From Hypanus sabinus (lineage: Eukaryota), in NCBI RefSeq assembly GCF_030144855.1, contig NC_082719.1, forward strand, positions 88,784,001-88,848,000: DNA of 64,000 bases. The letters are read 5' to 3'. Both the position numbers and the translations under genes were made by a program. Under the pieces are notes generated by a model. That model saw only the letters and a list, made by a program, of their open reading frames with translations, searched no databases and was not told the origin of the DNA. This document shows positions 692 to 61,094 of the stretch, one piece after another; position 1 is the first letter of the stretch, and each line of letters starts with the position of its first letter.

Positions 692-1052
692 CATCACTAT
701 TCAGGGCCCCAGACAGTCCTTCCAGGTGAAACGACACTTCACCTGTGAGTCGGCTGGTGTGGTATACTGCGTCCGGTGTTCCCAGTTTGGCCTTTTATAT
801 ATTGGTGAGACCCGACACAGACTGGGAGACCGTTTCGCTGAACACCCATGCTCGGTCCGTCAGAGAAAGCAGGATCTCCCAGTGGCCACACATTTTAATT
901 CCACGTCCCATTCCCATTCTGATATGTCTATTCATGGCCTCCTTTATTGTCAAAATGAATCCAAACTCAGGTTGGAGGAAGAACACTTTATATACCGGCA
1001 GGGTAGCCTCCAACCTGATGGCATGAACATTGACTTCTCTAACTTCCGTTAA
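692..1052 (+). pseudogene. PLE GIY-YIG endonuclease domain (C-terminal part of PLE ORF; no RT, non-autonomous)
   Basis: FTCESAGVVYCVRCSQFGLLYIGETRHRLGDRFAEH...VATHFN...RLEEEHFIY..GSLQPDGMN matches the VVY-x-YIGET GIY-YIG signature of PLEs. Confidence 0.9.
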
Positions 1053-1358
1053 TGTCCCTCCTCCCCTTCTTACCCCATCCCTGACATATTTAGTTGTTTG
1101 TTCATTTTTCGCTCTCTCTCTGCCCAACACTCTGTCTGTTCTCCATCTCCCTCTGGTGCTTCCCCCCCCCCCCTCCCACTTTCTTTCTCCCAAGGCCTCC
1201 TGTCCCATGATCCTTCCCGTTCTCCAGCTCTGTATCACTTTTGCCAATCGCCTTTCCAGCTCTTAGCTTCATCCCACCTCCTCCAGTCTTCCCCGATCAT
1301 TTCACATTTCCCCCTCCCCCCACTACTTTCAAATCTCTTACTATTTTTCCTTTCAGGT

Positions 1359-1394
1359 AGTCCTGACGAAGAGTCTCGGCCTGAAACGTCGACA
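1359..1394 (+). ncRNA. Minimal type I hammerhead ribozyme in PLE pseudo-LTR
   Basis: GUC-CUGACGA-AGAGUCUCGGCCU-GAAA-CGUC^GAC: conserved core CUGANGA/GAAA, stem I GUC/GAC, palindromic ACGU in place of stem III, predicted cleavage after 1390. Confidence 0.75.
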
Positions 1395-1579
1395 GTGCTT
1401 CTCCTTATAGATGCTGCCTGGCCTGCTGTGTTCCATCAGCATTTTGTGTGTGTTATGTTTTCCCAGTTACCAAATTACACTAAATACTGCTTAGCTAATA
1501 CAAAGCTAAGTACTCTTATTTCTGATTTGCAACCACCTTCTTATTTTAACCAATATACAGTACTGTACAAAGGCTTTTT

Positions 1580-2418: not shown

Positions 2419-2970
2419 CAAACAAGAGAAAATCTGCAGATGTTGGAACTCCAGGCAACATATGCAAAATGCTGGAGGAACACAGCAGGGCAGACAGCAT
2501 CAATGGAAAAGAGTAAACAGTAAATATTTTGGACCGAGACCCTTCAACAGGACTGGAGAAAAAAGATGAGAAGTCAGAGTAAGAAGGTGACAGGAGGGGA
2601 GGAAGGAATACAAATTAATAGTGAAACTGGAAGGGAAAGGGGTGAAATAAAGAGCTGGGAAATTGATTGGTGGAAGAGATAAAGGGCTGGAGAATGGGGA
2701 ATCTGATAGTACAGGATAGACGGCCATGGAAGAAAGGAAAGGGGGAGGAGCGCCAAATGGAGGTGATGGGCAGGTAAGGAGATAAGGAGAGAGAGGGAAA
2801 TAGGAATGGGGAATGGTGAAGGGAGGGGGAGGACCACTACCGGAAGTTTGAGAAATCAATATTCATGCCATCAGGCTGGAGGCTACCGAGACAGAAAACA
2901 AGATGTTGCTCTTCCAACCTGAGTGTGGCCTCATCAGGACAGTACAGGACACCATGGACTGACATGACAG
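2419..2970 (-). mobile_element. PLE 3' fragment (EN C-terminus, spacer, pLTR with degenerate hammerhead and tail)
   Basis: Reverse complement of 930-1452-type sequence; degenerate ribozyme cagtcctgttgaagggtctcggtccaaaat. Confidence 0.85.
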
Positions 2971-6118: not shown

Positions 6119-6305
6119 CACACAAAATGCTGGAGGAACTCAGCAGGCCAGGAAGCATCTATGGAAAAAAGAACAGTTAACATTTTGGACCGAAACATCG
6201 ACTGTACTCTTTTTCCATAGATGCTGCCTGGAGTGATGAGTTCCTCTAGCATTTTGTGTGTGTTGTTTGGATTTCCAGCATCTGCAGATTTTCTCTTGTT
6301 TGTTC
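6119..6305. mobile_element. Palindromic mini-PLE (two inverted pLTR halves)
   Basis: Arms cacaaaatgctggaggaactca... / ...tgagttcctctagcattttgtg; TSD aggctactgcccat (6105-6118) / aggctagtgctcat (6306-6319). Confidence 0.85.
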
Positions 6306-8199: not shown

Positions 8200-9660
8200 T
8201 TCCAGAGACAGCAACATATCAATGTACATGGACAAGTCATCAATCAATAAACATGCTTTCACAATACCAATGTTTGCTTGATTTTTTTTCTTTCTGTTTT
8301 AAGTAACAGCCCATAACTAGCTTCACTATATTCAAGATCCAGTCTTTTGGGTGGTGCTTTATTTCTTTCAGGATGGTGACTCTGGACATGTGGAGTGGCA
8401 GTACGTTTGGTAGGTGCCTTGTCAAAGACAACTTTCTCTGTTGCCACTGTCACGCTGCTGTTGGTGACATGATCATCAATAAGAGGTTAGTCTGGTAGAT
8501 GCAATGTGTCCATCTTGTTGGATGCAATTGACTCAGGTGTGTTCTTCGGGTAAGCATCCAGTATCTGGTCCACATGACATCTCCATGTATGATCTCCAAC
8601 ATTTACTGTGTCCATCTTGGTTCTCGTAGCTATCCTACTGGGTGTCCACTTGTCTTCTCGATAATCATGTGTTAGGACTTCCTGTCCAACCTCAAAGCTC
8701 CTTGCTGATTTACTTGGCAACTGGCTGAACTGTTTATTCTGCACTTCATTCCATAGATCAGGTTTCAGGAGGTCTATGCAAGATCTCAGATTCCTGTTCA
8801 TGAATAGCATTGAAGATGTTTAATTTGTCATAACATCAACATAGTTCCGATACACAAAAAGGATGTTATCTATCTTGTGCTGAAGAAAATGTCTTCTTCG
8901 TCTATAGCTTTAATGGACTTTTTGAAGGTTTGGATAAACCTTTCAGCATTCATTGCTGGGTAGTTAGCAGCTGAACAGAACAGTTTGATGCCATTTATCT
9001 TCAGGAATAGTCTGAGCACTTCTGAAGTGTATTTTGGTCCATTGTCACTCACAATTTGTGCAGATAAGCCACTTCTGGAGAAGATAGTCCTCAGATTGTA
9101 AACAGCCCTTTCTGATGTGGTTGACTTCATTGGTATGCCCTCAGGCCACTTCGAATGAGCATCCACAGCAAATAGAAGCATGGAATTCACGAATGGCCCG
9201 GCAAAGTCAATAAGCACAATGGAAGATGGATCTGAACATCTGATTGAATTTGCTTCAAGATCACTGGTGACCGCAGAACACAGCAATACACAGACTGACC
9301 AAAAGGCCCTTAGTCTGGTGAAGATGGCCACTCCCACTGGAGTAAAGGTGCCTCTGGGGGTGCACGTTGAACATTGTGCCATTCCAACCAGCTTTTGGAC
9401 AATCTCTCTATCTATTTTTATACTGCAAAAAATACCGGGAAATGTGTTGCTTGGGTGAACAACCAACACTCGCGAGGATGTGCTAGAGTCAGCTTGCAAT
9501 ATTCGCCACATGTTCTGGTGTCACATAACATCTCACTAGTATTTGGCAGAACAGCACAGAAAATAACAAACTATGAAATGAGCAAAACAAACTCCTTTCT
9601 TCCTCGCCACTGGCTTGGATGCAGACATTAGGTCTTTGATTTCCACAGCAGACTTGCAGA
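8200..9660 (-). mobile_element. Gypsy-superfamily LTR retrotransposon remnant: integrase, pol C-terminus and partial 3' LTR
   Basis: APPEAPLLQWEWP, IDFAGPF...VDAHSKWPE...IVSDNGP...AERFIQTFK integrase core, WRCHVDQI, PERNKAPPKRLDL; 8200-8250 matches the LTR-like sequence at 11660-11710. Confidence 0.9.
9213..9320 (+). pseudogene. Gypsy RNase H fragment lying inverted inside the integrase
   Basis: MEDGSEHLIEFASRSLVTAEHSNTQTDQKALSLV resembles the Gypsy RNase H motif DGSERPIAFASRSLTxAExNYAQIDxEALxLV. Confidence 0.8.
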
Positions 9661-18344: not shown

Positions 18345-18605
18345 TAAACACAAGAGATTCTCAGCTGCTGCATTCACAAAATGCTGGAGGAACTCAGTAA
18401 TTCAGGCATCCTTCCCTCCACCTGGTCTCACCTATGACCACCTAGTTTATACTCTTTCCTCTCTCCCCTGAACCCCACCTTCTTATTCAGGCTTTTGCCC
18501 CCTTCTGTTCTAGTCCTGATGAAGGGTCTCAGCATGAAGTATCAACTGTTTGTTCCCCTCCCTAGATGCTGCCTGACACGCTGAGTTCCTCCAGCAAATT
18601 GCGCG
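18345..18605. mobile_element. Degenerate PLE with inverted pLTR piece, spacer and pLTR
   Basis: cacaaaatgctggaggaactcag followed by tagtcctgatgaagggtctc...gctgagttcctccagca. Confidence 0.75.
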
Positions 18606-22672: not shown

Positions 22673-23630
22673 ATTAAAAGGTATAAGGTAGTAGTCATGG
22701 TAGAGCTACTCGAAGCAATTCTCTGTTCTCCACAGAGGATACTACACATCTTAAGGATGATATATTGGCCTTGTATAGATTGAAAACTGGTTTTGCTATT
22801 TTGGTAAATAAATTCCAAGAAATAAATTTCAAAATGCTAACAGCAAGACAAGGATTACATTTATTGACATTTAAAATACTGAGGAATGAAGTTTCAGTCT
22901 TGTCATCAGAACTGACTGCATGGACAAACAGAAATTACTTTCATTAGCTGTAGTAATTTTAAAAATCTTTTCAAGTAAATATATGATCAAAGTACATATG
23001 TGTCACTATACACAAGCCTGAGATTCATTTTCTTCACGAGTAAGAAAATGCTTCACCAAGTAAATTACAATAGCACCTCTAACTCTTATATTACTGGCAA
23101 TCAATGCCAATTCCCAGCATTGAATCTGAATTTGAAACTATCCTGAAAATCAAAGATAGCCTATTTTTGCTTATAGCTTTTTGAGGATTGCACTCTAGTA
23201 CTCCAGCCTGTTGCCAGCTCACAGCTGCTCACCTTTCTTTTTACATTAGTTCTCAAAAGATATATCACTGGTTTCATGCTGGCCAAGAGTTATATAAGGT
23301 CACAGCTCATTTCTTTTATAGTAAGTTTCAGCTTCCCAAATTCATTGTGAAGAAGCACATTCTTCCTGCATATTTCTGTGATTAAAAACAATACTCGGGT
23401 TATTGAGACAGCTGGCACAGCATTAAATCCTATTTTGTTGTTCATTGCAACAATTTCACTTATGAAATTAAAAATATTACATTTTACCAAATATTTAATA
23501 AATCCTATGTACCAATAAATACTATCTAAATAGTAAGATGGAGTTGTTGTATTTAATAAAACAATTCCATCAGTTAACATAAAATGCTGGTGGAACACAG
23601 CAGGCCAGGCAGCATCTAAGGAAGAGGCAC

Positions 23631-23666
23631 AGTCGACGTTTCAGGCCGAGACTCTTCATCAGGGCT
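23631..23666 (-). ncRNA. Minimal hammerhead ribozyme (minus strand)
   Basis: AGCC-CUGAUGA-AGAGUCUCGGCCU-GAAA-CGUC^GACU; core intact, one mismatch in stem I. Confidence 0.7.
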
Positions 23667-23672
23667 AGAGTT

Positions 23673-23708
23673 AGTCCTGACGAAGGGTCTTGGCCCGAAA
23701 TGTCGACT
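23673..23708 (+). ncRNA. Minimal hammerhead ribozyme (plus strand)
   Basis: AGUC-CUGACGA-AGGGUCUUGGCCC-GAAA-UGUC^GACU; stem I AGUC/GACU, stem II GGGUC/GGCCC. Confidence 0.7.
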
Positions 23709-24856
23709 GTGCTTCTTCCTATAGATGCTGCCTGGCCTGCTGCGTTCCACCAGCATTTTGAGTCCTGTGTGTGTTGCTTGAATTTTCAGCATCTGCAGAT
23801 TTCCTGGTGTTTCCATCAGTTACTGTGTGATAAAGAAAGCCCATATAGAATGCCACCTCCAAAGTAAAAAAAAATATTTCTAAGATTGAAAAATTTGCAT
23901 TTCCATACCCTTTCCATATTATGCATGTATATATGTAAGTATTTATTTTTTCATTCATAGAATCTGAGATAAAGTGGGAGAAAATAGTTGAGCTTAGTAC
24001 ATTAATGAGGAACTCCTTCAGTGATGTTCTGACACTGATCTAACTTACTGCCAACGACCACAGCCATCCACCAGTATTCAGGTATGATTCCAGTAATTGC
24101 TATGCTTTCCTTATTTCTCATTGTCTTCGGTCTCACTGTGGCTCCATAATACCTTCAAATCAGGACCGACCTGGGGGAAGAAACAGTGGCCTTGCCTCTG
24201 GCACAGAGTCTGGCCCTGTGGCTCATAAGGTCAGGAAACTGAAGGGGATGGCAGCAATCATAGGGCTCTCTATAGTTAGGGGGACAGATAGTCAGTTCTG
24301 TGGAAATAAAAAGGAAACACGGATGGTAGTTTGCCTCCCAGGTGCCAAGGTCTGCGATGTTTCTGAAAACGTCCACAACATGTTGAAAAGGGAGGGTGAG
24401 CAGCCAGAAGTCGAGGTACATATTGATACCAACTATGTAGGTAGAAAAAAGGAGGAGGTCCTGAACCAGAATACAGAGGGTTAGGAAGGAAGCTGGGAAG
24501 CAGAACCTCAAGGGCAGTAATCTCCAGATTGCTGCTGTGCCACACGACAGTGAGGATAGGAATAGAATGAGGTGGTGTGGTTGAAGAATTGGAGCAGGGG
24601 ACAGGGATTCAGATTTCTGGATCATTGGGGCCTCTTCTGGGGCAGGTGTGACCTATACAAAAGGACGGGTTGCGCATGAATCTGAGGGGGTTTAATATCC
24701 TTGCAGGCAGGTTTGCTAGAGCTGTTGGGACTAATATGGCAGGGGGATTGGGACCAGTATGATAGAGCTAAGGATGAGTCAGGAATTTTACAAGTAAATG
24801 ATGTAATATGTAACATGACAGTAAGGAAGGACAAGTCAATGATTGGATATTGAATT

Positions 24857-32124: not shown

Positions 32125-32273
32125 TTTATTTGTATTTATTCATTTAGAGATACAGCACGATAATAGCCCCTTATAGCTGAATGAGCCCATGTCACCCAAT
32201 TGCACCCATGTGACAAATTAACCTACTAACCCATGCATCTTTGGAATCTGGGAGGAAACCCAAGCCTCCAACA
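32125..32273 (-). mobile_element. V-SINE 3' half (5' half at 36034-36136), split by a CR1 insertion
   Basis: Collinear with 5060-5298; breaks at ggaggaaacccaagcctccaacag and resumes at gaaatctgtgtggtca. Confidence 0.8.
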
Positions 32274-32850
32274 GAGGTTGGCACTGAGGTTGGACCCTCG
32301 AATAGGAAGGGGAGGAGGGAAGAGAAGAGAGCGGTAGTGATAGAGGATTCTATAGTCAGGGGGGTGGATAGGAGATTTTGTGGGGAAGATTGGGAGTCTT
32401 GGATGGTATGTTTCCTCCCTGGTACCGGGGTCCAGGACATCTCAGATCCAGTGCAGGTTATTCTCGAAAGGGAGGGCAAGAACTCAGATGTTGTGGTCCA
32501 CTTAGGGACCAACGATGTGGGTAGGATGAGTGCAGGGGTCCTGCGTAGTGAGTTCAGGGAGTTAGGTGTGAAGCTGAAGGGCAGGACCTCCAGGGTAACA
32601 ATCTCAGGATTGTTACCTGTGCCACGTGCGAGTGAGGCAAGGAACAGAAGGATTATACAGATTAATACATGGCTGAGAGGATGGTGCAGGAGGGAGGGCT
32701 TCAGGTTTTTAGATAATTGGGCTTTGTTCCAGGGAAGGTGGGATCTGTTCTGACGAGACGGTTTATACCTGAACTGGAGCGGTACTAACATTCTTACAGG
32801 AAAGTTTACTAGTGCTGCTCGGGGGTGGGGGGGGTGTTTAAACTAAATTT
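32274..32850 (+). pseudogene. CR1 ORF1 SGNH/GDSL esterase domain (disrupted)
   Basis: VVIEDSIVRG (block I, G>E), LPG, HLGTND, DGLYLN (H>Y); stop at 32751-32753. Confidence 0.9.
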
Positions 32851-33129
32851 GCAGGGGGCAGGGATCCAGAATGTGAGAGAGGATAGCGAGATGAAGAATA
32901 AAGGACAGGTGGGGATCACACGGTTCTGGAATATTAAGTGTATAGTACAGAAAGGTGAGGCGGAACAAGTGATTAGGAGGACACATGTACAGAGGGATGG
33001 TCTGACAGAACATGGAGTTAAATGTGTAGAAAGAATAAGGAAATTTAGGAAGGACAACAAAATTCAAGGGGCGTATAGCCCGATGGGAGTTCGGGGAGCT
33101 GGGTTAAGCACAATAGATAACAATTTAAA

Positions 33130-35953
33130 CAGAAAGAGGAGAAATGGGCTAAAAATTCTATATCTGAATGCACGGTGTCAGAAATAAGGTGTATGAGCTT
33201 GAAGCTCAGGTGTGAATGGGTAACTATGATGTTGCTGGGATAACGGAGACATGGCTGCAGGGAGATCAGACCTGGGAAATGAACGTACAAGGGTATATGT
33301 GCTATCATAGGGACAGAAATGTGGGCAGAGGGGGTGGGGTGGCCCTGTTGGTGAGGAATGAGATTCAGTGCTTTGCAAGGGGGGACATAGGATCAGGAGA
33401 AATAGAGTCTGTGTGGATAGAACTGAGGAACAGTAAGGGCAAAAAGACCCTAATGGGTGTTGTCTACAGGCCACCAAACAGTAGCATGGATATTGGGTGC
33501 AAGTTGAATAGGGAGTTAACATTGGCATGTGGCAAAGGTAATGTCGCAGTAGTTATGGGGGATTTCAACATGCAGGTGAACTGAGAGAATCAGGTTGGTG
33601 CTAGACCCCAGGATAGGGAGTTTGTAGAGTGCCTACAGGATGCATTCTTGGAACAGCTTGTACGAGAGCTGACCAGGGACAAGGCTATTCTGGATTTAGT
33701 GTTATGTAATGAACAGGATTTGATTAGCGATCTTGAAGTAAAGGAGCCATTAGGAGGTAGTGACCATAATATGATAAGTTTTTATCTGCAATTTGAGAAG
33801 GGTAAGGGCAGATCGGAGGTGTCAGTGTTGCAGTTGAACAGGGGAAACTATGGAGGCATGAGGGAGGAGCTGGCCAAAGTTGACTGGAAGGATATCCTAG
33901 CAGAAAAGACAGTGGAAAAGCAATGGTAGGTATTCTTGGGAATAATGCACAAGGTGCAAAATCAGTTCATCCCCTGGAGAAGGAATGATTCAAAGGGGGG
34001 AAAGGGGCCATAGTGGTTGACAAAGGAAGTCAGAGATTGCATAGCATTAAAAAAAAGTATGACAGAGCTAAGGTGAGTGGGAAGACAGATGATTGGGAAA
34101 TTTTTAAGGAACAACAGAACTTAACTAAAAAGGCAATACGGGCAGAAAAAATGAGGTACGAACGCAAGCTTGCCAGGAATATAAAGGAGGATAGCAAAAG
34201 CTTTTTTAGGTATGTGAAGAGAAAGAAGATAGTTAAGAACAATGTTGGTCCCTTGAAGAATGAATTGGGTGAAATTGTTATGGGTAACAGAGAAATGGCA
34301 GAAGAATTTTATAAGTACTTTAGATCTGTCTTCACTAGGGAAGACACAAGCAATCTCCCAGATGTATGGATGGGCCAAGGACATAGGGTAACAGAGGAAA
34401 TGAAACAGATTGACATTAGGAAGGAAACGGTGATGAGTAGACTGATGGGACTGAAGGCTAACAAATCTGCAGGTCCAGATGGCCTGCATCCTAGGGTACT
34501 AAAGGAGGAGGCTCTGGACATTGCAGATGCATTGGTAATCATTTTCCAATGTTCCTTAGATTCAGGATCAGTTCCTGAGGATTGGAGAATGGCTAATGTT
34601 ATCCCACTTTTTAAGAAAGGAGGGAGGGAGGAAACAGAGAACTATCGTCCTGTCAGCCTAACATCAGTAGTGGGGAAGATGCTAGAGTCCATTATTAAAG
34701 ATGAAATAGTGGCATATCTAGATAGCAGTGATAGGATTGGGCTGAGCCAGCATGGATTTACCAAGGGCAAATCAAGCTTGACTAATCTATTGGAGTTTTT
34801 CGAGGATGTAACCAGGAAGTTAGACAAGGGAGATCCAGCGGATGTAGTGCACCTCGATTTTCAGAAGGCATTTGATAAGGTCCCACATAGGAGATTGGTG
34901 TGTAAAATCAGAGCTCATGGCATTGGGGGGAAGATATTGACATGGATAGAAAACTGATTGGCAGATAGAAAGCAAAGGGTAGCAGTGAATGGGTGTTTCT
35001 CGGAATGGTAGGTGGTGACTAGTGGGGTGCCACAGGACTCGGCATTGGGACCACAGCTGTTTAAGATTTACATCAACGATTTAGATGAAGGCATTGAGAA
35101 TAACATCAGCAAGTTTGCTGATGCTACTAAGCTGGGTGGCAGTGTGACATGTGATGAGGATGTTAGGAGAATTCAGGGTGACTTGGATAGGCTGGGTGAG
35201 TGGGCAGATACTTGGCAGATGACGTTTAATGTGAATAAGTGTGAGGTTATCCACTTTGGGAGTAAGAACAGGAAGGCAGATTATTATCTGAATGGTGTAG
35301 AGTTAGGTAAGGGAGAAAAACAAAGAGATCTAGGGGTCCTTGTTCATCAGTCACTGAAGGTGAATGAGCAAGTGCAGCAGGCGGTAAAGAAGGCTAATGA
35401 AATGTTGACCTTTATTACAAAGGGAATTGAGTACAAGAGAAAGGAAATCCTTTTGCATTTGTACAGAGCCCTGGTGAGACCACACCTGGAGTATTGTGTA
35501 CAGTTTCGGTCTCCAGGGTTAAGGAAGGACATCCTGGCTGTAGTGGAAGTGCAGCGTAGATTCACAAGGTTAATTCCTGGGATGTCCGGACTGTCTTACG
35601 CAGAGAGGTTAAAGAGAATGGGCTTGTACACACTGGAATTAAGGAGATTGAGAGGGGATCTGATTGCAACATATAAGATTATTAAGGGATTGGACAAGAT
35701 AGAGGCAGGAAATAAGTTCCAGATGCTGGGAGAGCCCAGTACCAGAGGGCATGTTTTAAGAAAAAGGGGTAGGTCATTTAGGACAGAGTTAAGGAAAAAC
35801 TTCTTCTCCCAGAGAGTTGTGGGGGTCTGGAATACACTGCCTCAGAAGGCAGTGGAGGCCAATTCTCTGGATGCTTTCAAGGAGGAGCTAGATAGGTATC
35901 TTATGGATAGGGGAATCAAGGGATATGGGGACAAGGCAGGAATCGGGTATTGA
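33130..35953 (+). pseudogene. CR1 ORF2 APE endonuclease-reverse transcriptase (frameshifts and stops; FADD mutated to FADA)
   Basis: LYLNAR, GITETWL, VYRPPN, GDFN, GGSDHN, GPDGLHPRVLKE, NYRPVSLTS, DFQKAFDKVPH, VTSGVPQ, KFADATKLGG (35114-35125), RPHLEYC. Confidence 0.95.
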
Positions 35954-37254: not shown

Positions 37255-37727
37255 TCAACAACAAATTCCTGATGGCCAGCCATTTCAATTTCTATTCCCA
37301 TTCCTATTCTGACATGTCAGTCCATGGCCTCCTATTTGGCATGATGAGGCCACTCTTAGAGTGGGAGTAATCTGTCATATACTGTCAAGGTAGCCTTAAC
37401 CTGATAGCATGAACATCAATTTCTCTTTCTGGTAATTTTTTTCTTTTTTTTCTCTTTTCCCCTCCCCTTTCGCTCTTTTTCTATTCCCCACTCTGGCATC
37501 TCATATCTTCTCATCAACTCCTTGTCGTGCCACTCCTTTTACCCTTTCTCCCATAATCCACTCTTCTATCAGATTGCTTCTTCTCCAACCCTTTACCTTT
37601 CCCACTCACACAGCTTCAACTATCACCTCCAGTTTGTCCTCTTTACCCTTCCCCATCTTTTAATACCAGTTGACTATTTTTTTTTATTTGGACAGATGCT
37701 GCTTGACCTACTGAGTTCCTCCTGCAT
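37255..37727 (+). mobile_element. PLE 3' fragment; hammerhead core deleted; runs into gap
   Basis: cattcctattctgacatgtcagtccatggcctcc (EN end), pyrimidine tract, gatgctgcttgacctactgagttcctcc. Confidence 0.8.
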
Positions 37728-41699: not shown

Positions 41700-43153
41700 A
41701 GAAGCCTGATTTTATCAAGTTCCCACCTGCTTTAAGAAGACCACTATCATTCCAATGTGTTCCTTAATGACTACCGCCTGGAGGGTTAGAATTTTATCAC
41801 CCCGAAGTGCTTTGAGAATCATGCCAGGCATGATTCCAGGCAACCTCGACATACTGCAGTTCGCCTACCAATTAAAAAAGGTCTATGGTGGACACCATCT
41901 CCCTAGCCCTACACTTATCTCCTTAGCAGCTGGACAATAATGACACCTACAGACTATAATGAGACCTTCAGACTATAATTTACAGACTACAAATCTTCCT
42001 TCAGTCCTATAATACCACACAATCATATTCTGGACCCTGGGAAAATCACAACATCCTGAAGAGCAGACTGGTCAATCAGGAGAGGGAAAAACGCATTCAC
42101 CACAATTATTCAAAATACAGGTGATCTATAAAGTTGAGGCCTCAGCCCCTACTCTACTCCCTATGTATTCCTGACTGTGTGGCCAGCTTCTGTCTAACAC
42201 CATATGCAGGTGTGAAGATGACATCACAAATAATGGGCCACATCTCAAATAATAATGAGTCAGAGTATAGGAAGGGGATAGAGAACTTAGTGACTTGCAC
42301 AAAATGTTGGAGGAATTCAACACGTCAGGTAACATCTATGGAAATGAATTAACAGTTAATATTTCAGCTGAGACCCTTGTTCAGCACAGGAAAGGAAGGG
42401 GGAAGATGCCAGAATAAGAAGCAGGGGGTTAGGAGAAGGAGTAATAGCTAGAAATTGACTTGTGAAGCCAAGTGGGTGGGGGAGGAGGATGAAATAAGAC
42501 ACTAGGAGGTGAAAGATGAAGAAGGTAAATGGCTAGAGAAGAAGGAATCTGATAGGAGAGGAGAGTGGACCATGAGAGAAAAGGAAGGAGGAGGGGCACA
42601 GGTGGGAGGTGATAGGCAGGTAAGAGATCCGTCCCTCTATGGTGGTATTACCTTCATACTTGGAGTTAGAACAGAAACTGGTCACACAGCAACAACAGTG
42701 TCTCTTCCACCTCAGGCGACTGAAGAAGTTTGGCATGAGCATCTAGATCCTCGAGACCTTCTACAAGGGCACCACTGAGAGCATCCTGACTGTTGTATCA
42801 CTGCCTGGTACAGGAAATGCACCAACTTTGATCACTGGGCACTGCAGAGAGTGGTACGGAGAGCCCAGCGCATCTGTGGATGTGACCTTCCCTCCACTGA
42901 GGACATTTATAGGAGCAAGTGCATAAAGAAGGCCTGGACGGCTAGTCACCCCAAACGTAAACTATTTCAGCTGCTTCCATCTGGGAAATGTTACTGCAGC
43001 ATTAAAGCCAGGACCAACTGGCTACAGGACAGCTTCTTTCTACAAGGCATTAAACATAAATACACATGTTTATGCATTGCAACAGAGTCACAATGCAAAG
43101 ATTTTTACTCCCGCACATTGTGGGATGGATATAAGATTTAAATAAATTCAAAT
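41700..43153 (+). mobile_element. Degraded Rex1/Babar RT region and tail, with nested PLE
   Basis: LDILQFAYQ; RRAQRICGCDLP..HPKRKLFQLLPSGKCYCSIKARTNWLQDSFF; 3'UTR similar to the reverse of 24860-24990. Confidence 0.8.
42298..42625 (-). mobile_element. PLE pLTR and spacer fragment inside Rex1
   Basis: cacaaaatgttggaggaattca...gagaccctt...purine-rich tract like 2560-2790. Confidence 0.75.
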
Positions 43154-46589: not shown

Positions 46590-47086
46590 TAAACACAAAT
46601 GATTCTACCAATGCTGGAAATCCCAAGGAACAGACAAAAAATTCTGAAAGAACTGAGCAGGTTAGGTAGCATCCATGGGGAGGAATAAACAGTCGATGTT
46701 TCGGGCCAAGAGCCTTTATCAGGACAGGATAAGAATGGGAAGAAACCAGAATAAGAAGGTAGGGGTTGGGGAAGGAATACAAGCTGGCAGCTGATAGGTG
46801 AAACTAAATGAGGGTGGGGGAGAGAGGATGATGTGAGACACTGGGGGATGATAGGTTGTAGAGGTAAAGGCAGAAAAAGGAATCAATTAACGAACCATAG
46901 AAAAGGAGGGGCACCAGAGCAAGATGATGGGATGAAAGAGGAACCAGAATGGGGAATAGAAAAAGAGAGAAGTGGAAGGTGCAGACATCATTGGAGGTTA
47001 GAGAGACATCAGTGTTCATGCCATCAGGATAGTGGTTTCCCAGACAGAATATGAGGTTTTCCTCCTCCAACCTGAGTGTGGCCACA
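46590..47086 (-). mobile_element. PLE 3' fragment with degenerate hammerhead
   Basis: ATLRLEEENLIFCLGNHYPDGMN; gtcctgataaaggctcttggcccgaaacatcgactg on minus strand. Confidence 0.8.
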
Positions 47087-59530: not shown

Positions 59531-60897
59531 CGACTTTACACTCGTGTACTGAAGAATGACAGTAAACAATATTCAATCCTGTAGCTTCTGGGGAGTTGGA
59601 CAATCAGATTAACCACAAGCGAATGGCATTTTCATGTCTTACTGTATTTATACTCAAACTGCTTTGTCTTGTCGGTACCAGAGGCACCAAAAGCGGTGGG
59701 TATAGCTACGGTGGGAAGTGGGAACTCCTGCAGGTGAAGAAAACGGATGAAAACGGATGAGGCTGGTTATTCGACAGAATTAAAACACCAGTTCCTTTTA
59801 TTTTAAAGAAAAAGTCAGCAAGTTCTGAACAGCTACAGTCAGGAAATATATGTACTGCAGTACGAGATACAAATCACAAGGATTTTGATGGAAATTCTGT
59901 AGATCCAAGAAACTAAATTCAGTCGCACCCAGAAGCAGACATCGGGTTTGTTTTGTGGAATTAGCTTGTACTCTTTGCTTCCAATGCAAGCAGTGTGCCA
60001 ACTTACTGCTGTCTGCTAATTAACATGATTGCAGGATACAGCCAACACTAACAATACTGTTGTGTGGCGACATGCCTCAGGAGAGGTCCCCGAATTCTGA
60101 GGAGCTAACATCACTTAAAGCAACCCTGCACTGATTAAAGTCAGGCTATGTGTCTCAATGGTGAACACAAAAAGGAAAGTGATGGAAATATGCTCTCGTT
60201 TCCTGATTCCATGTCAAAGCTACACTTACTTGTTTTCCTCTAAAATGGAAAATTAATTATGGCCGCGGCAGACTGCAGATTTTATTCAGGACTTCCTTGT
60301 TGTTGCCCAGATGGTACACAGATCTGATGAGAAGCAAAGAATGCAAAAGCCTGGAAAGCTGAAGCAACAGCAGAAAATGCTGAATGTAGACAGCATCTGT
60401 GGAAAGAGAAACCGAATTAATATTTCAGGTCTCCATCAGAGGGATACAGCATATAAACAGGCCCTTCAGAACACAATGTCCACACTAACTATATCATTAC
60501 ACTCACCTTGCCCATAAGATTCTACCCCTCACCTACATAATAGGGGCAATTTAGTGTACATATAATCTACAAACCCATGCCACTAGGATTTCATTGGAAT
60601 TGATCAAAATTCAAAGTTCAACGTAAATTTTTTATTGAAGTGTATATGTATATATATATATATATGTATATATATCACCATATACAGCCCTAAGCTTTGT
60701 TTCCTTGTGGGCATTCATACTAAGTACAAGAACCACAATAGAAGCAATGAAAATGTACTGAAAACAGAGATGGTCGAAAACAACCAATATGCAAAACCCA
60801 ATAAATTGTGAAAATCAAAAAAAGGGTAAAGAATTAAATAAATAATTTCAAGAACATTAGTGGATTCTGCAGTGAATCTAAGGTCACCCATACTGAT

Positions 60898-61094
60898 AAG
60901 AGAAAATCTACAGATACTGGAAATCCAAGCAATGCAGACAAAATGCTGGAGGAACTCAGTAGGCCAGGCTGCATCGATGGAAAAAAGTACAGTCGACATT
61001 ACGGGCCAAAGCCCTTTGGCAGGACTTGAAACATCGACTGCACTTTTTTCCGTAGATGTTGCCAGGTCTACGGAATTCCATCAGCATTTTGTGA
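60898..61094. mobile_element. Palindromic mini-PLE
   Basis: Arms acaaaatgctggaggaact...cagtcgac / atcgactg...tcagcattttgt; TSD gtcacccatactgat (60883-60897) / gtcacccatgctaat (61095-61109). Confidence 0.85.

What the first reader, a model, noticed from the sequence alone, without database searches (positions are those of the whole stretch)
23565..23822. A 234-bp insertion made only of two back-to-back hammerhead ribozyme arms
Seen: a perfect 12-bp TSD (TTCCATCAGTTA) flanks an element with no coding sequence. It is an ~87-bp near-perfect inverted repeat with a 4-nt spacer and a ~50-nt one-sided tail. Each arm carries a minimal hammerhead (23631-23666 minus, 23673-23708 plus), so a transcript from either strand contains one ribozyme plus its full antisense. 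The arms carry different stem II variants (AGAGUCUCGGCCU versus AGGGUCUUGGCCC), and the first variant recurs exactly at 1370-1382, so the arms may come from two different template RNAs. Established: PLE pseudo-LTRs carry minimal hammerheads, and PLE insertions often have an inverted 5' pLTR and a short tail. Inference: this is a minimal ribozyme-only mobile unit in which hairpin folding and ribozyme folding compete.
Basis: partly seen in the sequence, partly recalled or inferred. Interest (0 to 1): 0.8.

Follow-up and report, generated by a model that had tools for sequence, protein, structure and literature searches.

The report
Truncated fold-back Penelope retrotransposon insertion
This 234-bp hairpin-shaped insert is a real but old and dead copy of the tail end of a Penelope-like jumping gene, in the inverted-plus-direct, one-sided-tail form already described for these elements, not a new ribozyme-only mobile unit.

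Summary
A perfect 12-bp target-site duplication (23565-23576 / 23811-23822) flanks a 234-bp insert. The insert has an inverted arm (23577-23668), a 4-nt centre, a direct arm (23673-23759) and a one-sided ~50-nt tail. Both arms keep the hammerhead core boxes.

The arms are the 3' pseudo-LTR end of a very abundant Penelope-like element (PLE). A sister copy (692-1452, 12-bp TSD) joins the same sequence to a GIY-YIG endonuclease ORF, and full-length homologues of that ORF are RT plus C-terminal GIY-YIG proteins.

Two more TSD-flanked inverted+direct+tail inserts lie in the window (6119-6305, 60895-61094). Their inner junctions differ and cut through the ribozyme. These are therefore independent aborted insertions, not copies of one mobile unit.

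The arms differ by 8 transitions (5 at CpG) and 1 indel in 87 nt, which post-insertion decay explains. Contigs from four other organisms carry the insertion at the same site, so it is old and fixed.

As RNA the hairpin (-173 / -158 kcal/mol) would swamp the ribozyme fold, and the minus-arm ribozyme has broken helices.

This layout is published (Arkhipova 2013; Craig 2021; Frangieh 2024). A follow-up on other DNA of this genome (s1-203380) reached the same verdict.

The parts
23565..23576 (.). Left copy of the 12-bp target-site duplication TTCCATCAGTTA
   Evidence: D3, 100%; one of only 6 such repeats in 64 kb. The flank is single-copy by contig depth.
23577..23668 (-). Inverted arm: the PLE pseudo-LTR 3' segment in antisense. 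Its outer end is at the proximal terminus (...CATTTT-GTGT on the minus strand), so it has no tail.
   Evidence: All other inverted arms in the window stop at the same outer end (6119, 61094, 18375).
23631..23666 (-). Minimal type I hammerhead motif of the inverted arm. Core boxes are intact. Helix I has a C.A mismatch, helix II has G.U plus A.C, and 15.2/16.2 = C,G (palindromic).
   Evidence: helix I 1 contiguous bp, helix II 2; helix II absent from the MFE; no Rfam hit.
23669..23672 (.). 4-nt centre (GAGT) of the palindrome. Positions 23669-23670 (AG) may still be templated, since the sister copy has CAGG before TAGTCC.
23673..23759 (+). Direct arm: the PLE pseudo-LTR 3' segment in sense. It contains the hammerhead and an ATG (23726) that in the family opens a frame running through the tail.
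23673..23708 (+). Minimal type I hammerhead motif of the direct arm. It has CUGACGA (N7=C), a bulged A, a 4-bp helix II (GGGU/GCCC), and a helix I of 4 bp plus one G.U. 15.2/16.2 = U,G, so the CpG>TpG change has destroyed the palindrome.
   Evidence: helix I 5, helix II 5; the family majority is C at 23691 and 23701.
23760..23810 (+). One-sided 'tail': the segment between the proximal and distal 3' termini of the family. It carries a 5-nt extra AGTCC at 23761-23765 relative to most family copies.
   Evidence: tailed copies end ...CTCTTGTTTG; tail-less copies end ...CATTTTGTG(TGT); table 4 (5 nt left out at 23761).
23811..23822 (.). Right copy of the TSD
692..1452 (+). Sister copy of the same subfamily. 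It is 5'-truncated inside a GIY-YIG endonuclease ORF (696-1052), followed by the 3' UTR/pLTR and the hammerhead (1359-1394). It ends at the proximal terminus and has an 11/12 TSD (680-691 / 1453-1464).
6119..6305 (+). Second fold-back doublet. The arms meet at GG(A)CC inside helix II, with a 1-nt centre. The tail is on one side and the TSD matches 12/14.
60895..61094 (-). Third fold-back doublet. The inverted arm is about 24 nt shorter than the direct arm, and the direct arm starts at the hammerhead's 5' edge. The tail is on one side and the TSD matches 11/12.

Best explanation
The insert is the product of one aborted retrotransposition event of a Penelope-like element (PLE), inserted dead on arrival.

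Shown:
- The two arms and the tail are the last ~90-140 nt of the family's transcription/insertion unit (pLTR end with the minimal hammerhead, and the start of the ORF).
- They sit inside a single 12-bp staggered-cut duplication.
- The family ends at two alternative 3' termini, a proximal one (after CATTTTGTG..) and a distal one ~45 nt further. The direct arm uses the distal terminus (hence the tail) and the inverted arm the proximal one.

Inferred:
- The element's GIY-YIG endonuclease nicked the target.
- Reverse transcription started at the distal internal start site of a PLE RNA and copied only ~140 nt, to the 5' edge of the hammerhead.
- Synthesis then turned around. Most likely the nascent cDNA folded back and primed on itself (about 0.55 of my belief). 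Alternatively the second nicked strand primed at the proximal start site on the same RNA and ran to the same 5' end (about 0.3).
- Either route gives two arms that were identical at birth, joined head to head.

Since then the copy has decayed, mostly by CpG deamination. It has no coding capacity and no evidence of further mobility. Its ribozyme motifs are passengers of the pLTR sequence. As a transcript it would be a long hairpin, not an active hammerhead.

The confidence given (0.78) is for identity, a single event and not being a mobile unit. The turn-around step itself is less certain.
For: Family identity:
- The element's sequence recurs more than 10 times in the window.
- Copy 692-1452 links it, within one TSD, to a GIY-YIG ORF.
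- That ORF has 3410 homologues at E<=1e-3. The long ones (816-927 aa) match it with their C-terminus, and four of the five tested carry RVT_1 plus C-terminal GIY-YIG, the canonical EN+ PLE architecture (the fifth, P0053, scored GIY-YIG only).

Known PLE insertion features, all present:
- An inverted 5'-truncated copy next to the direct one.
- A palindromic junction.
- A tail at one end only.
- A TSD.
- A hammerhead in the pLTR.
- The ORF start inside the pLTR.
Sources: PMC3846280, PMC8557442, PMC4209133.

Two 3' termini are seen across copies. This matches the two adjacent internal RT start sites, with the tail as the stretch between them, shown in vitro for an Anolis PLE that also extends both DNA strands (PMC11167929).

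Independent events: three TSD-flanked doublets in 64 kb have three different inner junctions.

Coupled arms:
- Inner ends coincide within 4 nt here and within 1 nt at 6119-6305.
- The inverted arm is never longer than the direct arm (4 of 4).
- A further symmetric junction appears in contigs of another organism (table 5c).

Decay: 8 of 8 differences are transitions and 5 of 8 are at CpG. The window's CpG o/e is 0.20. The family majority is C at 23691 and 23701, where the plus arm has T.

Age: flank contigs of four other organisms run into the arm or tail, with ~2-3% flank divergence, and no empty site was seen.

Hairpin dominance.
Against: - No full-length PLE of this family (RT plus both pLTRs) is in the window, so the position of the arm within the unit is inferred from one truncated copy and from the literature.
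- Under pure self-priming there is no shown reason why the fold-back copy should stop exactly at the proximal terminus in every case.
- Under both-strand priming there is no shown reason why both cDNAs should stop at the same point.
- One non-CpG arm difference (G/A at 23686/23653) is shared between the minus arm and copy 692-1452, so a two-template origin is not excluded.
- Direct-arm 5' ends seem to cluster at the hammerhead's 5' edge (here, 61026, and three contigs). Random truncation does not predict this.
- Only contigs, not raw reads, were available, and the census rests on 64 kb.
Confidence: 0.78

Rival explanations
1. Both-strand target-primed reverse transcription on two different PLE RNAs. 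Each nicked strand primes its own cDNA from a different source copy, and the two cDNAs are joined head to head, so the arms differed already at birth.
For: The Anolis PLE protein cleaves and extends both strands and starts at two internal sites (PMC11167929). The inverted arm starts at the proximal site and the direct arm at the distal site in all three TSD-flanked doublets. The minus arm shares AGAGUCUCGGCCU with copy 1359-1394.
Against: Two independent cDNAs should stop at unrelated points, yet the arms meet within 4 nt here and within 1 nt at 6119-6305. All 8 arm differences are transitions and 5 are CpG decays. Only one non-CpG site groups the minus arm with the other copy, and both arms share the subfamily markers (GTGCTTCT; CTG(C/T)GTTCCACCAGC) against the rest of the family.
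Confidence: 0.12
2. A non-autonomous, ribozyme-centred mobile unit. A short pLTR-only RNA (hammerhead plus RT entry site) would be a bona fide template that PLE proteins mobilise in trans, and the doublet, or its single arm, would propagate as a family.
For: The family module is extremely abundant (summed contig depth 1e5-1e6 against ~10 in the flanks). Direct-arm 5' ends recur at the hammerhead's 5' edge. pLTR-derived non-autonomous elements (retrozymes) are proposed for vertebrates (bioRxiv 10.64898/2026.07.22.740005). In vitro, the PLE RNA requirement is a short region around the RT start (PMC11167929).
Against: The doublets in the window differ in their junctions, and two of three lack a complete ribozyme in one or both arms. 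Many copies extend far upstream into pLTR or ORF. A transcript of the doublet folds into a -173 kcal/mol hairpin. No promoter or expression evidence was obtained.
Confidence: 0.07
3. Two separate events: a tail-less truncated PLE copy and, later, a second truncated copy inserted head to head next to it. Or a fold-back/MITE-type DNA transposon with 87-bp terminal inverted repeats.
For: PLEs tend to insert into or beside existing copies (PMC6765202). The insert has terminal inverted repeats and a TSD.
Against: A single perfect 12-bp TSD brackets the whole structure, and no internal TSD exists. The same layout with its own TSD recurs twice in the window. The termini are asymmetric (one tail) and coincide with retroelement 3' ends. 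Related copies are direct-only and attached to an RT-EN ORF.
Confidence: 0.03

Closest known systems
Inverted-pLTR insertions of endonuclease-containing Penelope-like elements (e.g. Pen2a_Av of Adineta vaga; Arkhipova et al. 2013, PMC3846280; general scheme in Craig et al. 2021, PMC8557442)
   Same: An inverted 5'-truncated pLTR abuts a direct pLTR head to head with a palindromic junction. An optional ~30-40-bp tail sits on one inverted pLTR only. One short TSD brackets the whole. The pLTR contains the first codons of the ORF and a hammerhead.
   Different: Here nothing lies between the pLTRs. Both are cut down to ~90 nt, so the insert has no ORF at all. The tail is ~46-51 nt and the TSD is 12 bp (8-10 bp in the rotifer examples).
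PAc (Poseidon of Anolis carolinensis) in vitro system, Frangieh et al. 2024 (PMC11167929)
   Same: Two adjacent internal RT start sites downstream of the hammerhead, with the tail as the stretch between them. Both DNA strands can be cut and extended. The hammerhead sits at the pLTR-ORF junction and is not needed for insertion.
   Different: That is a different family and host. Start sites here are inferred from genomic ends, not measured. The sequence at the proximal site here is a GU-rich run, whereas an AC-rich stem-loop was described for PAc.
Minimal (dimeric) type I hammerheads of metazoan PLEs, Cervera & de la Pena 2014 (PMC4209133); Lunse et al. 2017 as cited in PMC6765202
   Same: [quoted passage not shown] That paper already notes dual motifs on opposite strands 100-700 bp apart.
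   Different: The two motifs here are only 6 nt apart and mutually complementary. Each arm has lost at least one defining pairing.
Animal non-LTR retrozymes (Cervera & de la Pena 2020; Li, Clavereau & Pollet 2026, bioRxiv 10.64898/2026.07.22.740005)
   Same: Short, non-coding, hammerhead-bearing, pLTR-related sequences of PLE origin.
   Different: Retrozymes are tandem direct repeats, with hammerheads on the same strand that excise a unit-length (circular) RNA. This insert is an inverted pair with one motif per strand.
Hairpin self-priming by reverse transcriptases, and L1 5' inversions by twin priming (from general knowledge, not checked in a paper here)
   Same: A turn-around of cDNA synthesis, or priming from the second nicked strand, produces an inverted 5' segment within one TSD.
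   Different: L1 twin priming inverts an upstream part of the RNA, not the same segment. Here both arms cover the same segment, which gives a true palindrome.

Membership tests
Penelope-like element (EN+ PLE) insertion | The family encodes an RT with a C-terminal GIY-YIG endonuclease | tested here: met
   Not in this copy, which has no ORF. Sister copy 692-1452 has a GIY-YIG C-terminus (Pfam E=1.1e-3, 19.7 bits, below the 22.6 cutoff). Its homologues of 816-927 aa align at their C-terminus, and four of the five tested carry RVT_1 plus GIY-YIG (P0053: GIY-YIG only).
Penelope-like element (EN+ PLE) insertion | Pseudo-LTR carrying a hammerhead motif | tested here: met
   the motif lies ~300 nt downstream of the EN stop codon in copy 692-1452, and the same sequence is in both arms.
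Penelope-like element (EN+ PLE) insertion | Inverted 5'-truncated copy adjacent to the direct copy, with a palindromic junction, inside one TSD | tested here: met
   Two further examples are in the window.
Penelope-like element (EN+ PLE) insertion | Optional short tail at one end only | tested here: met
   23760-23810. Three tail-less and three tailed direct copies are in the window, and inverted arms are always tail-less.
Penelope-like element (EN+ PLE) insertion | AT-rich target preference | tested here: inconclusive
   Reconstructed empty sites are 59-75% AT against 60% for the window.
Minimal PLE hammerhead (min-HHR, Cervera & de la Pena 2014) | Core boxes CUGANGA, GAAA and a UH cleavage site in type I order | tested here: met
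   Both arms.
Minimal PLE hammerhead (min-HHR, Cervera & de la Pena 2014) | Extra nucleotide between 9 and 10.1, with a G10.1-C11.1 pair closing helix II | tested here: inconclusive
   The bulged A is present in both arms. G10.1-C11.1 is present in the plus arm, but is G.U followed by A.C in the minus arm.
Minimal PLE hammerhead (min-HHR, Cervera & de la Pena 2014) | Palindromic 15.2-16.2 allowing a dimeric helix III | tested here: inconclusive
   The minus arm has ACGU (palindromic). The plus arm has AUGU, after CpG decay at 23701. The family majority is C there.
Minimal PLE hammerhead (min-HHR, Cervera & de la Pena 2014) | Self-cleavage, as a dimer or with protein assistance | not testable with these tools
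   Needs in vitro transcription assays. Rfam hammerhead covariance models give no hit, as expected for motifs without helix III.
Non-LTR retrozyme | Tandem direct repeats with hammerheads on the same strand | tested here: not met
   Only one motif per strand, and no direct repeat of the arm in 23300-24100.
MITE / fold-back DNA transposon | Symmetric terminal inverted repeats reaching both ends, with a family-constant TSD length | tested here: not met
   There is a one-sided 50-nt tail, and the ends equal the retroelement's 3' termini. Relatives are direct-only copies attached to an RT-EN ORF. TSDs are 12, 12, 12 and 14 bp.

The most novel reading that the evidence does not exclude
The clustering of direct-arm 5' ends at the 5' edge of the hammerhead, a point preceded in longer copies by a polypyrimidine tract plus AG, may be real. 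If so, the templates of these mini-insertions would be short, defined RNAs. Either they begin at the hammerhead, or the RT enters at the upstream start sites of a normal mRNA and runs off its 5' end. The pLTR 3' module (hammerhead plus RT entry site) would then act as a SINE-like non-autonomous retroposon that inserts as fold-back doublets. These doublets would be natural records of how PLEs prime on both strands or on themselves.
Probability: 0.15. Interest if true: 0.5.

Novelty: already known. Interest (0 to 1): 0.2.

Why it matters
It matters mainly as a correction. A structure that looks like a purpose-built double-ribozyme palindrome is the smallest version of the standard Penelope insertion layout, and it is old debris.

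There is modest positive value. Such mini-insertions are clean natural read-outs of two poorly understood PLE steps, and they are very numerous in this genome. The steps are the use of two internal RT start sites (tail or no tail) and the turn-around that makes inverted pLTRs. A genome-wide census of them could discriminate between self-priming and both-strand priming.

If transcribed, an ~87-bp perfect-at-birth hairpin would also be a ready source of double-stranded RNA against the family. That is untested.

Tried and rejected
- Rfam gave no hammerhead hit for either arm or for the sister copy: whole window at gathering threshold, and 401-nt and 201-nt local scans at E<=10. The weak mir-2131 hit (E=1.3) only reflects the hairpin.
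- The RVT_1 ORFs at 34013-35953 were checked as a possible full-length PLE. They belong to a LINE with an AP-endonuclease N-terminus, so they are not the source family.
- ViennaRNA monomer and homodimer folds of the 40-nt motifs do not reproduce the hammerhead three-way junction. I used them only to show that helix II is lost in the minus arm and in copy 1.
- I tried to enlarge the census with DNA of related genomes. The two closest protein hits (stingray assembly) returned no DNA because the files were too large. A skate locus (L001) holds only 72-77% identical copies, so no census was possible.
- The papers of Pyatkov 2004 and Lunse 2017 are not held and are cited only through PMC6765202.
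- No empty-site allele appeared among the listed joints, but most joints were not shown.
- The composite at 18375-18600 (a 34-nt inverted piece plus a long direct copy) has no detectable TSD, so I did not count it as a single event.
Full report
**What is there**

- TTCCATCAGTTA occurs at 23565-23576 and again at 23811-23822.
- Between the two copies lie an inverted repeat with arms 23581-23667 and 23672-23759, 4 nt in the middle, and a stretch 23760-23810 that has no partner.
- Exact direct repeats of 12 nt or more at 100-400 nt spacing are rare: only 6 in 64 kb. One that abuts both ends of the palindrome is a genuine target-site duplication.
- The arms differ by 8 substitutions and one 1-nt indel over 87 nt. 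That is about 91% identity rather than near-perfect.
- The flanks are single-copy by contig depth.

**The genome**

The window has 40% G+C and a CpG observed/expected ratio of 0.20, typical of a methylated vertebrate genome. The closest protein to the transposon ORF described below comes from the stingray Hypanus sabinus (74% identity). The host is therefore probably an elasmobranch.

**The family**

The insert's sequence recurs more than ten times in the window, and reading those copies shows a retroelement 3' end.
- Several copies run further upstream: 1300-1452, 2427-2620, 18409-18600, 42300-42440 and 46611-46790.
- One of these, 692-1452, is bracketed by its own 11/12 TSD. It begins inside an ORF ending at 1052 that carries a GIY-YIG motif.
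- A library-wide HMMER search with that 118-aa peptide gave 3410 hits at E<=1e-3. The long ones (816-927 aa) align with their C-terminus, and Pfam finds RVT_1 plus a C-terminal GIY-YIG in four of the five tested (P0053: GIY-YIG only). This is the canonical architecture of endonuclease-containing Penelope-like elements (PLEs).
- The hammerhead lies ~300 nt downstream of the stop codon, in the pseudo-LTR, as described for PLEs (PMC4209133).
- An ATG in the arm opens a frame that stays open to the end of the tail in four of six tailed copies. This fits the published finding that the pLTR and tail contain the first codons of the PLE ORF (PMC3846280; PMC11167929).

**Two 3' termini**

Copies end either just after CATTTTGTG(TGT) or about 45 nt later at ...CTCTTGTTTG.
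- The proximal end is used by 692-1452, 18509-18600, 42300-42387 and all inverted arms.
- The distal end is used by the copies ending at 2427, 6300, 46611, 60895, 62885 and 23810.
- This corresponds to the optional tail of PLE insertions (PMC8557442; PMC3846280).
- In vitro, an Anolis PLE starts reverse transcription at two adjacent internal sites, and the tail is the stretch between them. That protein also cuts and extends both DNA strands (PMC11167929).

**The layout is not unique**

Two more inserts in the same 64 kb have the same plan: inverted tail-less arm, direct arm, one tail and one TSD.
- 6119-6305 has a TSD matching 12/14.
- 60895-61094 (minus strand) has a TSD matching 11/12.

Their inner junctions differ from each other and from this one.
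- At 6119-6305 the arms meet inside helix II with a 1-nt centre, so neither arm has the CUGAUGA box.
- At 60895-61094 the inverted arm starts only at GAAAC, while the direct arm starts at the hammerhead's 5' edge.

The doublets are therefore independent truncation products, not copies of a master doublet, and the ribozyme does not define their limits. This is the main reason I reject the 'ribozyme-only mobile unit' reading. Cervera and de la Pena already noted dual minimal hammerheads on opposite strands close to each other. Arkhipova and colleagues described inverted pLTRs with palindromic junctions, a one-sided tail and a TSD, and inferred self-priming.

**The ribozyme motifs**

A descriptor scan finds the complete boxes in family context only at 1359-1394, 23666-23631 (-) and 23673-23708 (+). 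Other copies have lost them.

The family consensus has the following features:
- helix I AGUC/GACU;
- CUGAUGA;
- a bulged A;
- helix II GGGU-CUCG-GCCC;
- GAAA;
- ACGU with no loop;
- cleavage after GUC.

This fits every feature listed for metazoan PLE minimal hammerheads, which are thought to act as dimers and cleave poorly in vitro.
- The plus arm keeps helices I and II, but a CpG>TpG change (23701) has turned ACGU into AUGU.
- The minus arm keeps ACGU, but has a C.A mismatch in helix I, and G.U plus A.C in helix II.
- Rfam's hammerhead models do not score them. This is expected without helix III, but it means the assignment rests on the descriptor and on family context.
- As RNA, either strand of the insert folds into one long hairpin of -172.9 or -158.4 kcal/mol (z about -20). 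Each transcript holds only one motif. Hammerhead folding is therefore not a realistic competitor.

**Are the arms from two templates?**

All eight differences are transitions.
- Five are CpG/TpG alternatives (23681, 23691, 23696, 23701, 23743). Three are not (23675, 23686, 23713) (corrected by the ungapped pairs).
- Five of the 12 ancestral CpGs have been lost, against about 3 changes in ~150 non-CpG positions. This is the usual tenfold-plus CpG excess.
- The pile-up of family contigs shows that the plus arm's T at 23691 and 23701 departs from a C majority.
- Both arms and copy 692-1452 share subfamily markers against the rest of the family.
- The 13-mer shared by the minus arm and copy 1 rests on one non-CpG site and one CpG>TpG change. 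That change also occurs in half of the other copies.

Decay from identical arms explains the data. A two-template origin is not excluded, but nothing requires it.

**Age**

Contigs from four coded organisms were laid on the locus.
- In all four, a contig runs from the unique left flank into the inverted arm.
- In two, a contig runs from the tail into the right flank.
- Flank divergence is about 2-3%, and no empty site appears among the listed joints.

The insertion is fixed and predates the split of these organisms from the window's source. A non-CpG arm divergence of ~2% per arm and an intact TSD are consistent with that.

**Mechanism**

Shown:
- one staggered-cut duplication;
- arm and tail ends at the family's two 3' termini;
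- inner ends of the arms coinciding within 4 nt (1 nt at 6119-6305);
- an inverted arm never longer than the direct arm (4 of 4);
- a further symmetric junction in another organism's contigs (table 5c).

Inferred: target-primed reverse transcription began at the distal start site, stopped after ~140 nt, and turned around.
- I favour fold-back self-priming of the cDNA. It explains the coupled inner ends and was proposed for PLE palindromic junctions.
- Priming of the second nicked strand at the proximal start site on the same RNA, running to the same 5' end, is a close second. It explains why the inverted arm always begins at the proximal terminus.
- Each model leaves one feature unexplained.

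**Loose ends**

- Direct-arm 5' ends recur at the hammerhead's 5' edge: here, at 61026, and in three contigs. Longer copies carry a polypyrimidine tract plus AG just upstream. This recalls the intron end at helix I in Drosophila virilis Penelope. Ascertainment bias is possible.
- The 5-nt extra AGTCC at the arm/tail junction, together with the next TG, repeats the first 7 nt of the direct arm. It may be a template-switch scar or chance.

**Verdict**

This is a real, old, dead, severely 5'-truncated fold-back insertion of a very abundant PLE, in a form already described in the literature. The same conclusion was reached by another follow-up on other DNA of this genome (s1-203380). Interest is low. 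The only forward-looking value is as material for a census that could settle how PLEs make inverted pLTRs.

Noticed in passing
window 692-1452 (+): A 5'-truncated PLE copy with a GIY-YIG endonuclease C-terminus (696-1052), pLTR and hammerhead (1359-1394). It ends at the proximal terminus and has an 11/12 TSD at 680-691 / 1453-1464. It belongs to the same subfamily as the two arms of the finding.
   Followed up: yes
window 6119-6305 (+) and 60895-61094 (-): Two more TSD-flanked fold-back PLE doublets (inverted tail-less arm, direct arm, tail), each with a different inner junction.
   Followed up: yes
window 18375-18600 (+): A 34-nt inverted arm fragment (proximal terminus) lies directly in front of a long direct pLTR copy. 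No TSD was detectable, so it is unclear whether this was one event or two.
   Followed up: partly
window 1340-1358, 18490-18508, 2559-2580 (-): Longer copies carry a polypyrimidine tract plus (C/T)AG immediately 5' of hammerhead helix I, which looks like a 3' splice site. Short copies tend to begin exactly there.
   Followed up: partly
window 23761-23765: A 5-nt extra AGTCC lies at the arm/tail junction. With the following TG it repeats the first 7 nt of the direct arm (23673-23679). It breaks the family's N-terminal reading frame.
   Followed up: partly
window 32241-35953 (+): A LINE with an ORF1-like ORF (32241-32753), an AP-endonuclease-like N-terminus (33216-33584) and RVT_1 in two pieces (34013-34957, 35012-35953). 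It is unrelated to the PLE family.
   Followed up: partly
window 8870-9511 (-): An ORF with an integrase core domain (Pfam rve, E=6e-11). It is presumably an LTR-retrotransposon or DIRS remnant.
   Followed up: no
window 37640-37727 (+), N run from 37728: Another copy of the PLE arm is cut off by the 156-N gap. The gap was left untouched.
   Followed up: no
window 8505/8607, 11017/11342, 43859/44174, 52177/52370, 55566/55754: Five other exact 12-13-nt direct repeats at 100-330 nt spacing. They may be TSDs of other short insertions.
   Followed up: no
protein P0001 (XP_059828265.1, Hypanus sabinus): A gene model named 'mucin-2 isoform X2' ends in a PLE endonuclease domain that is 74% identical to the window's. 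It is probably a transposon fragment absorbed into an automatic gene model.
   Followed up: no
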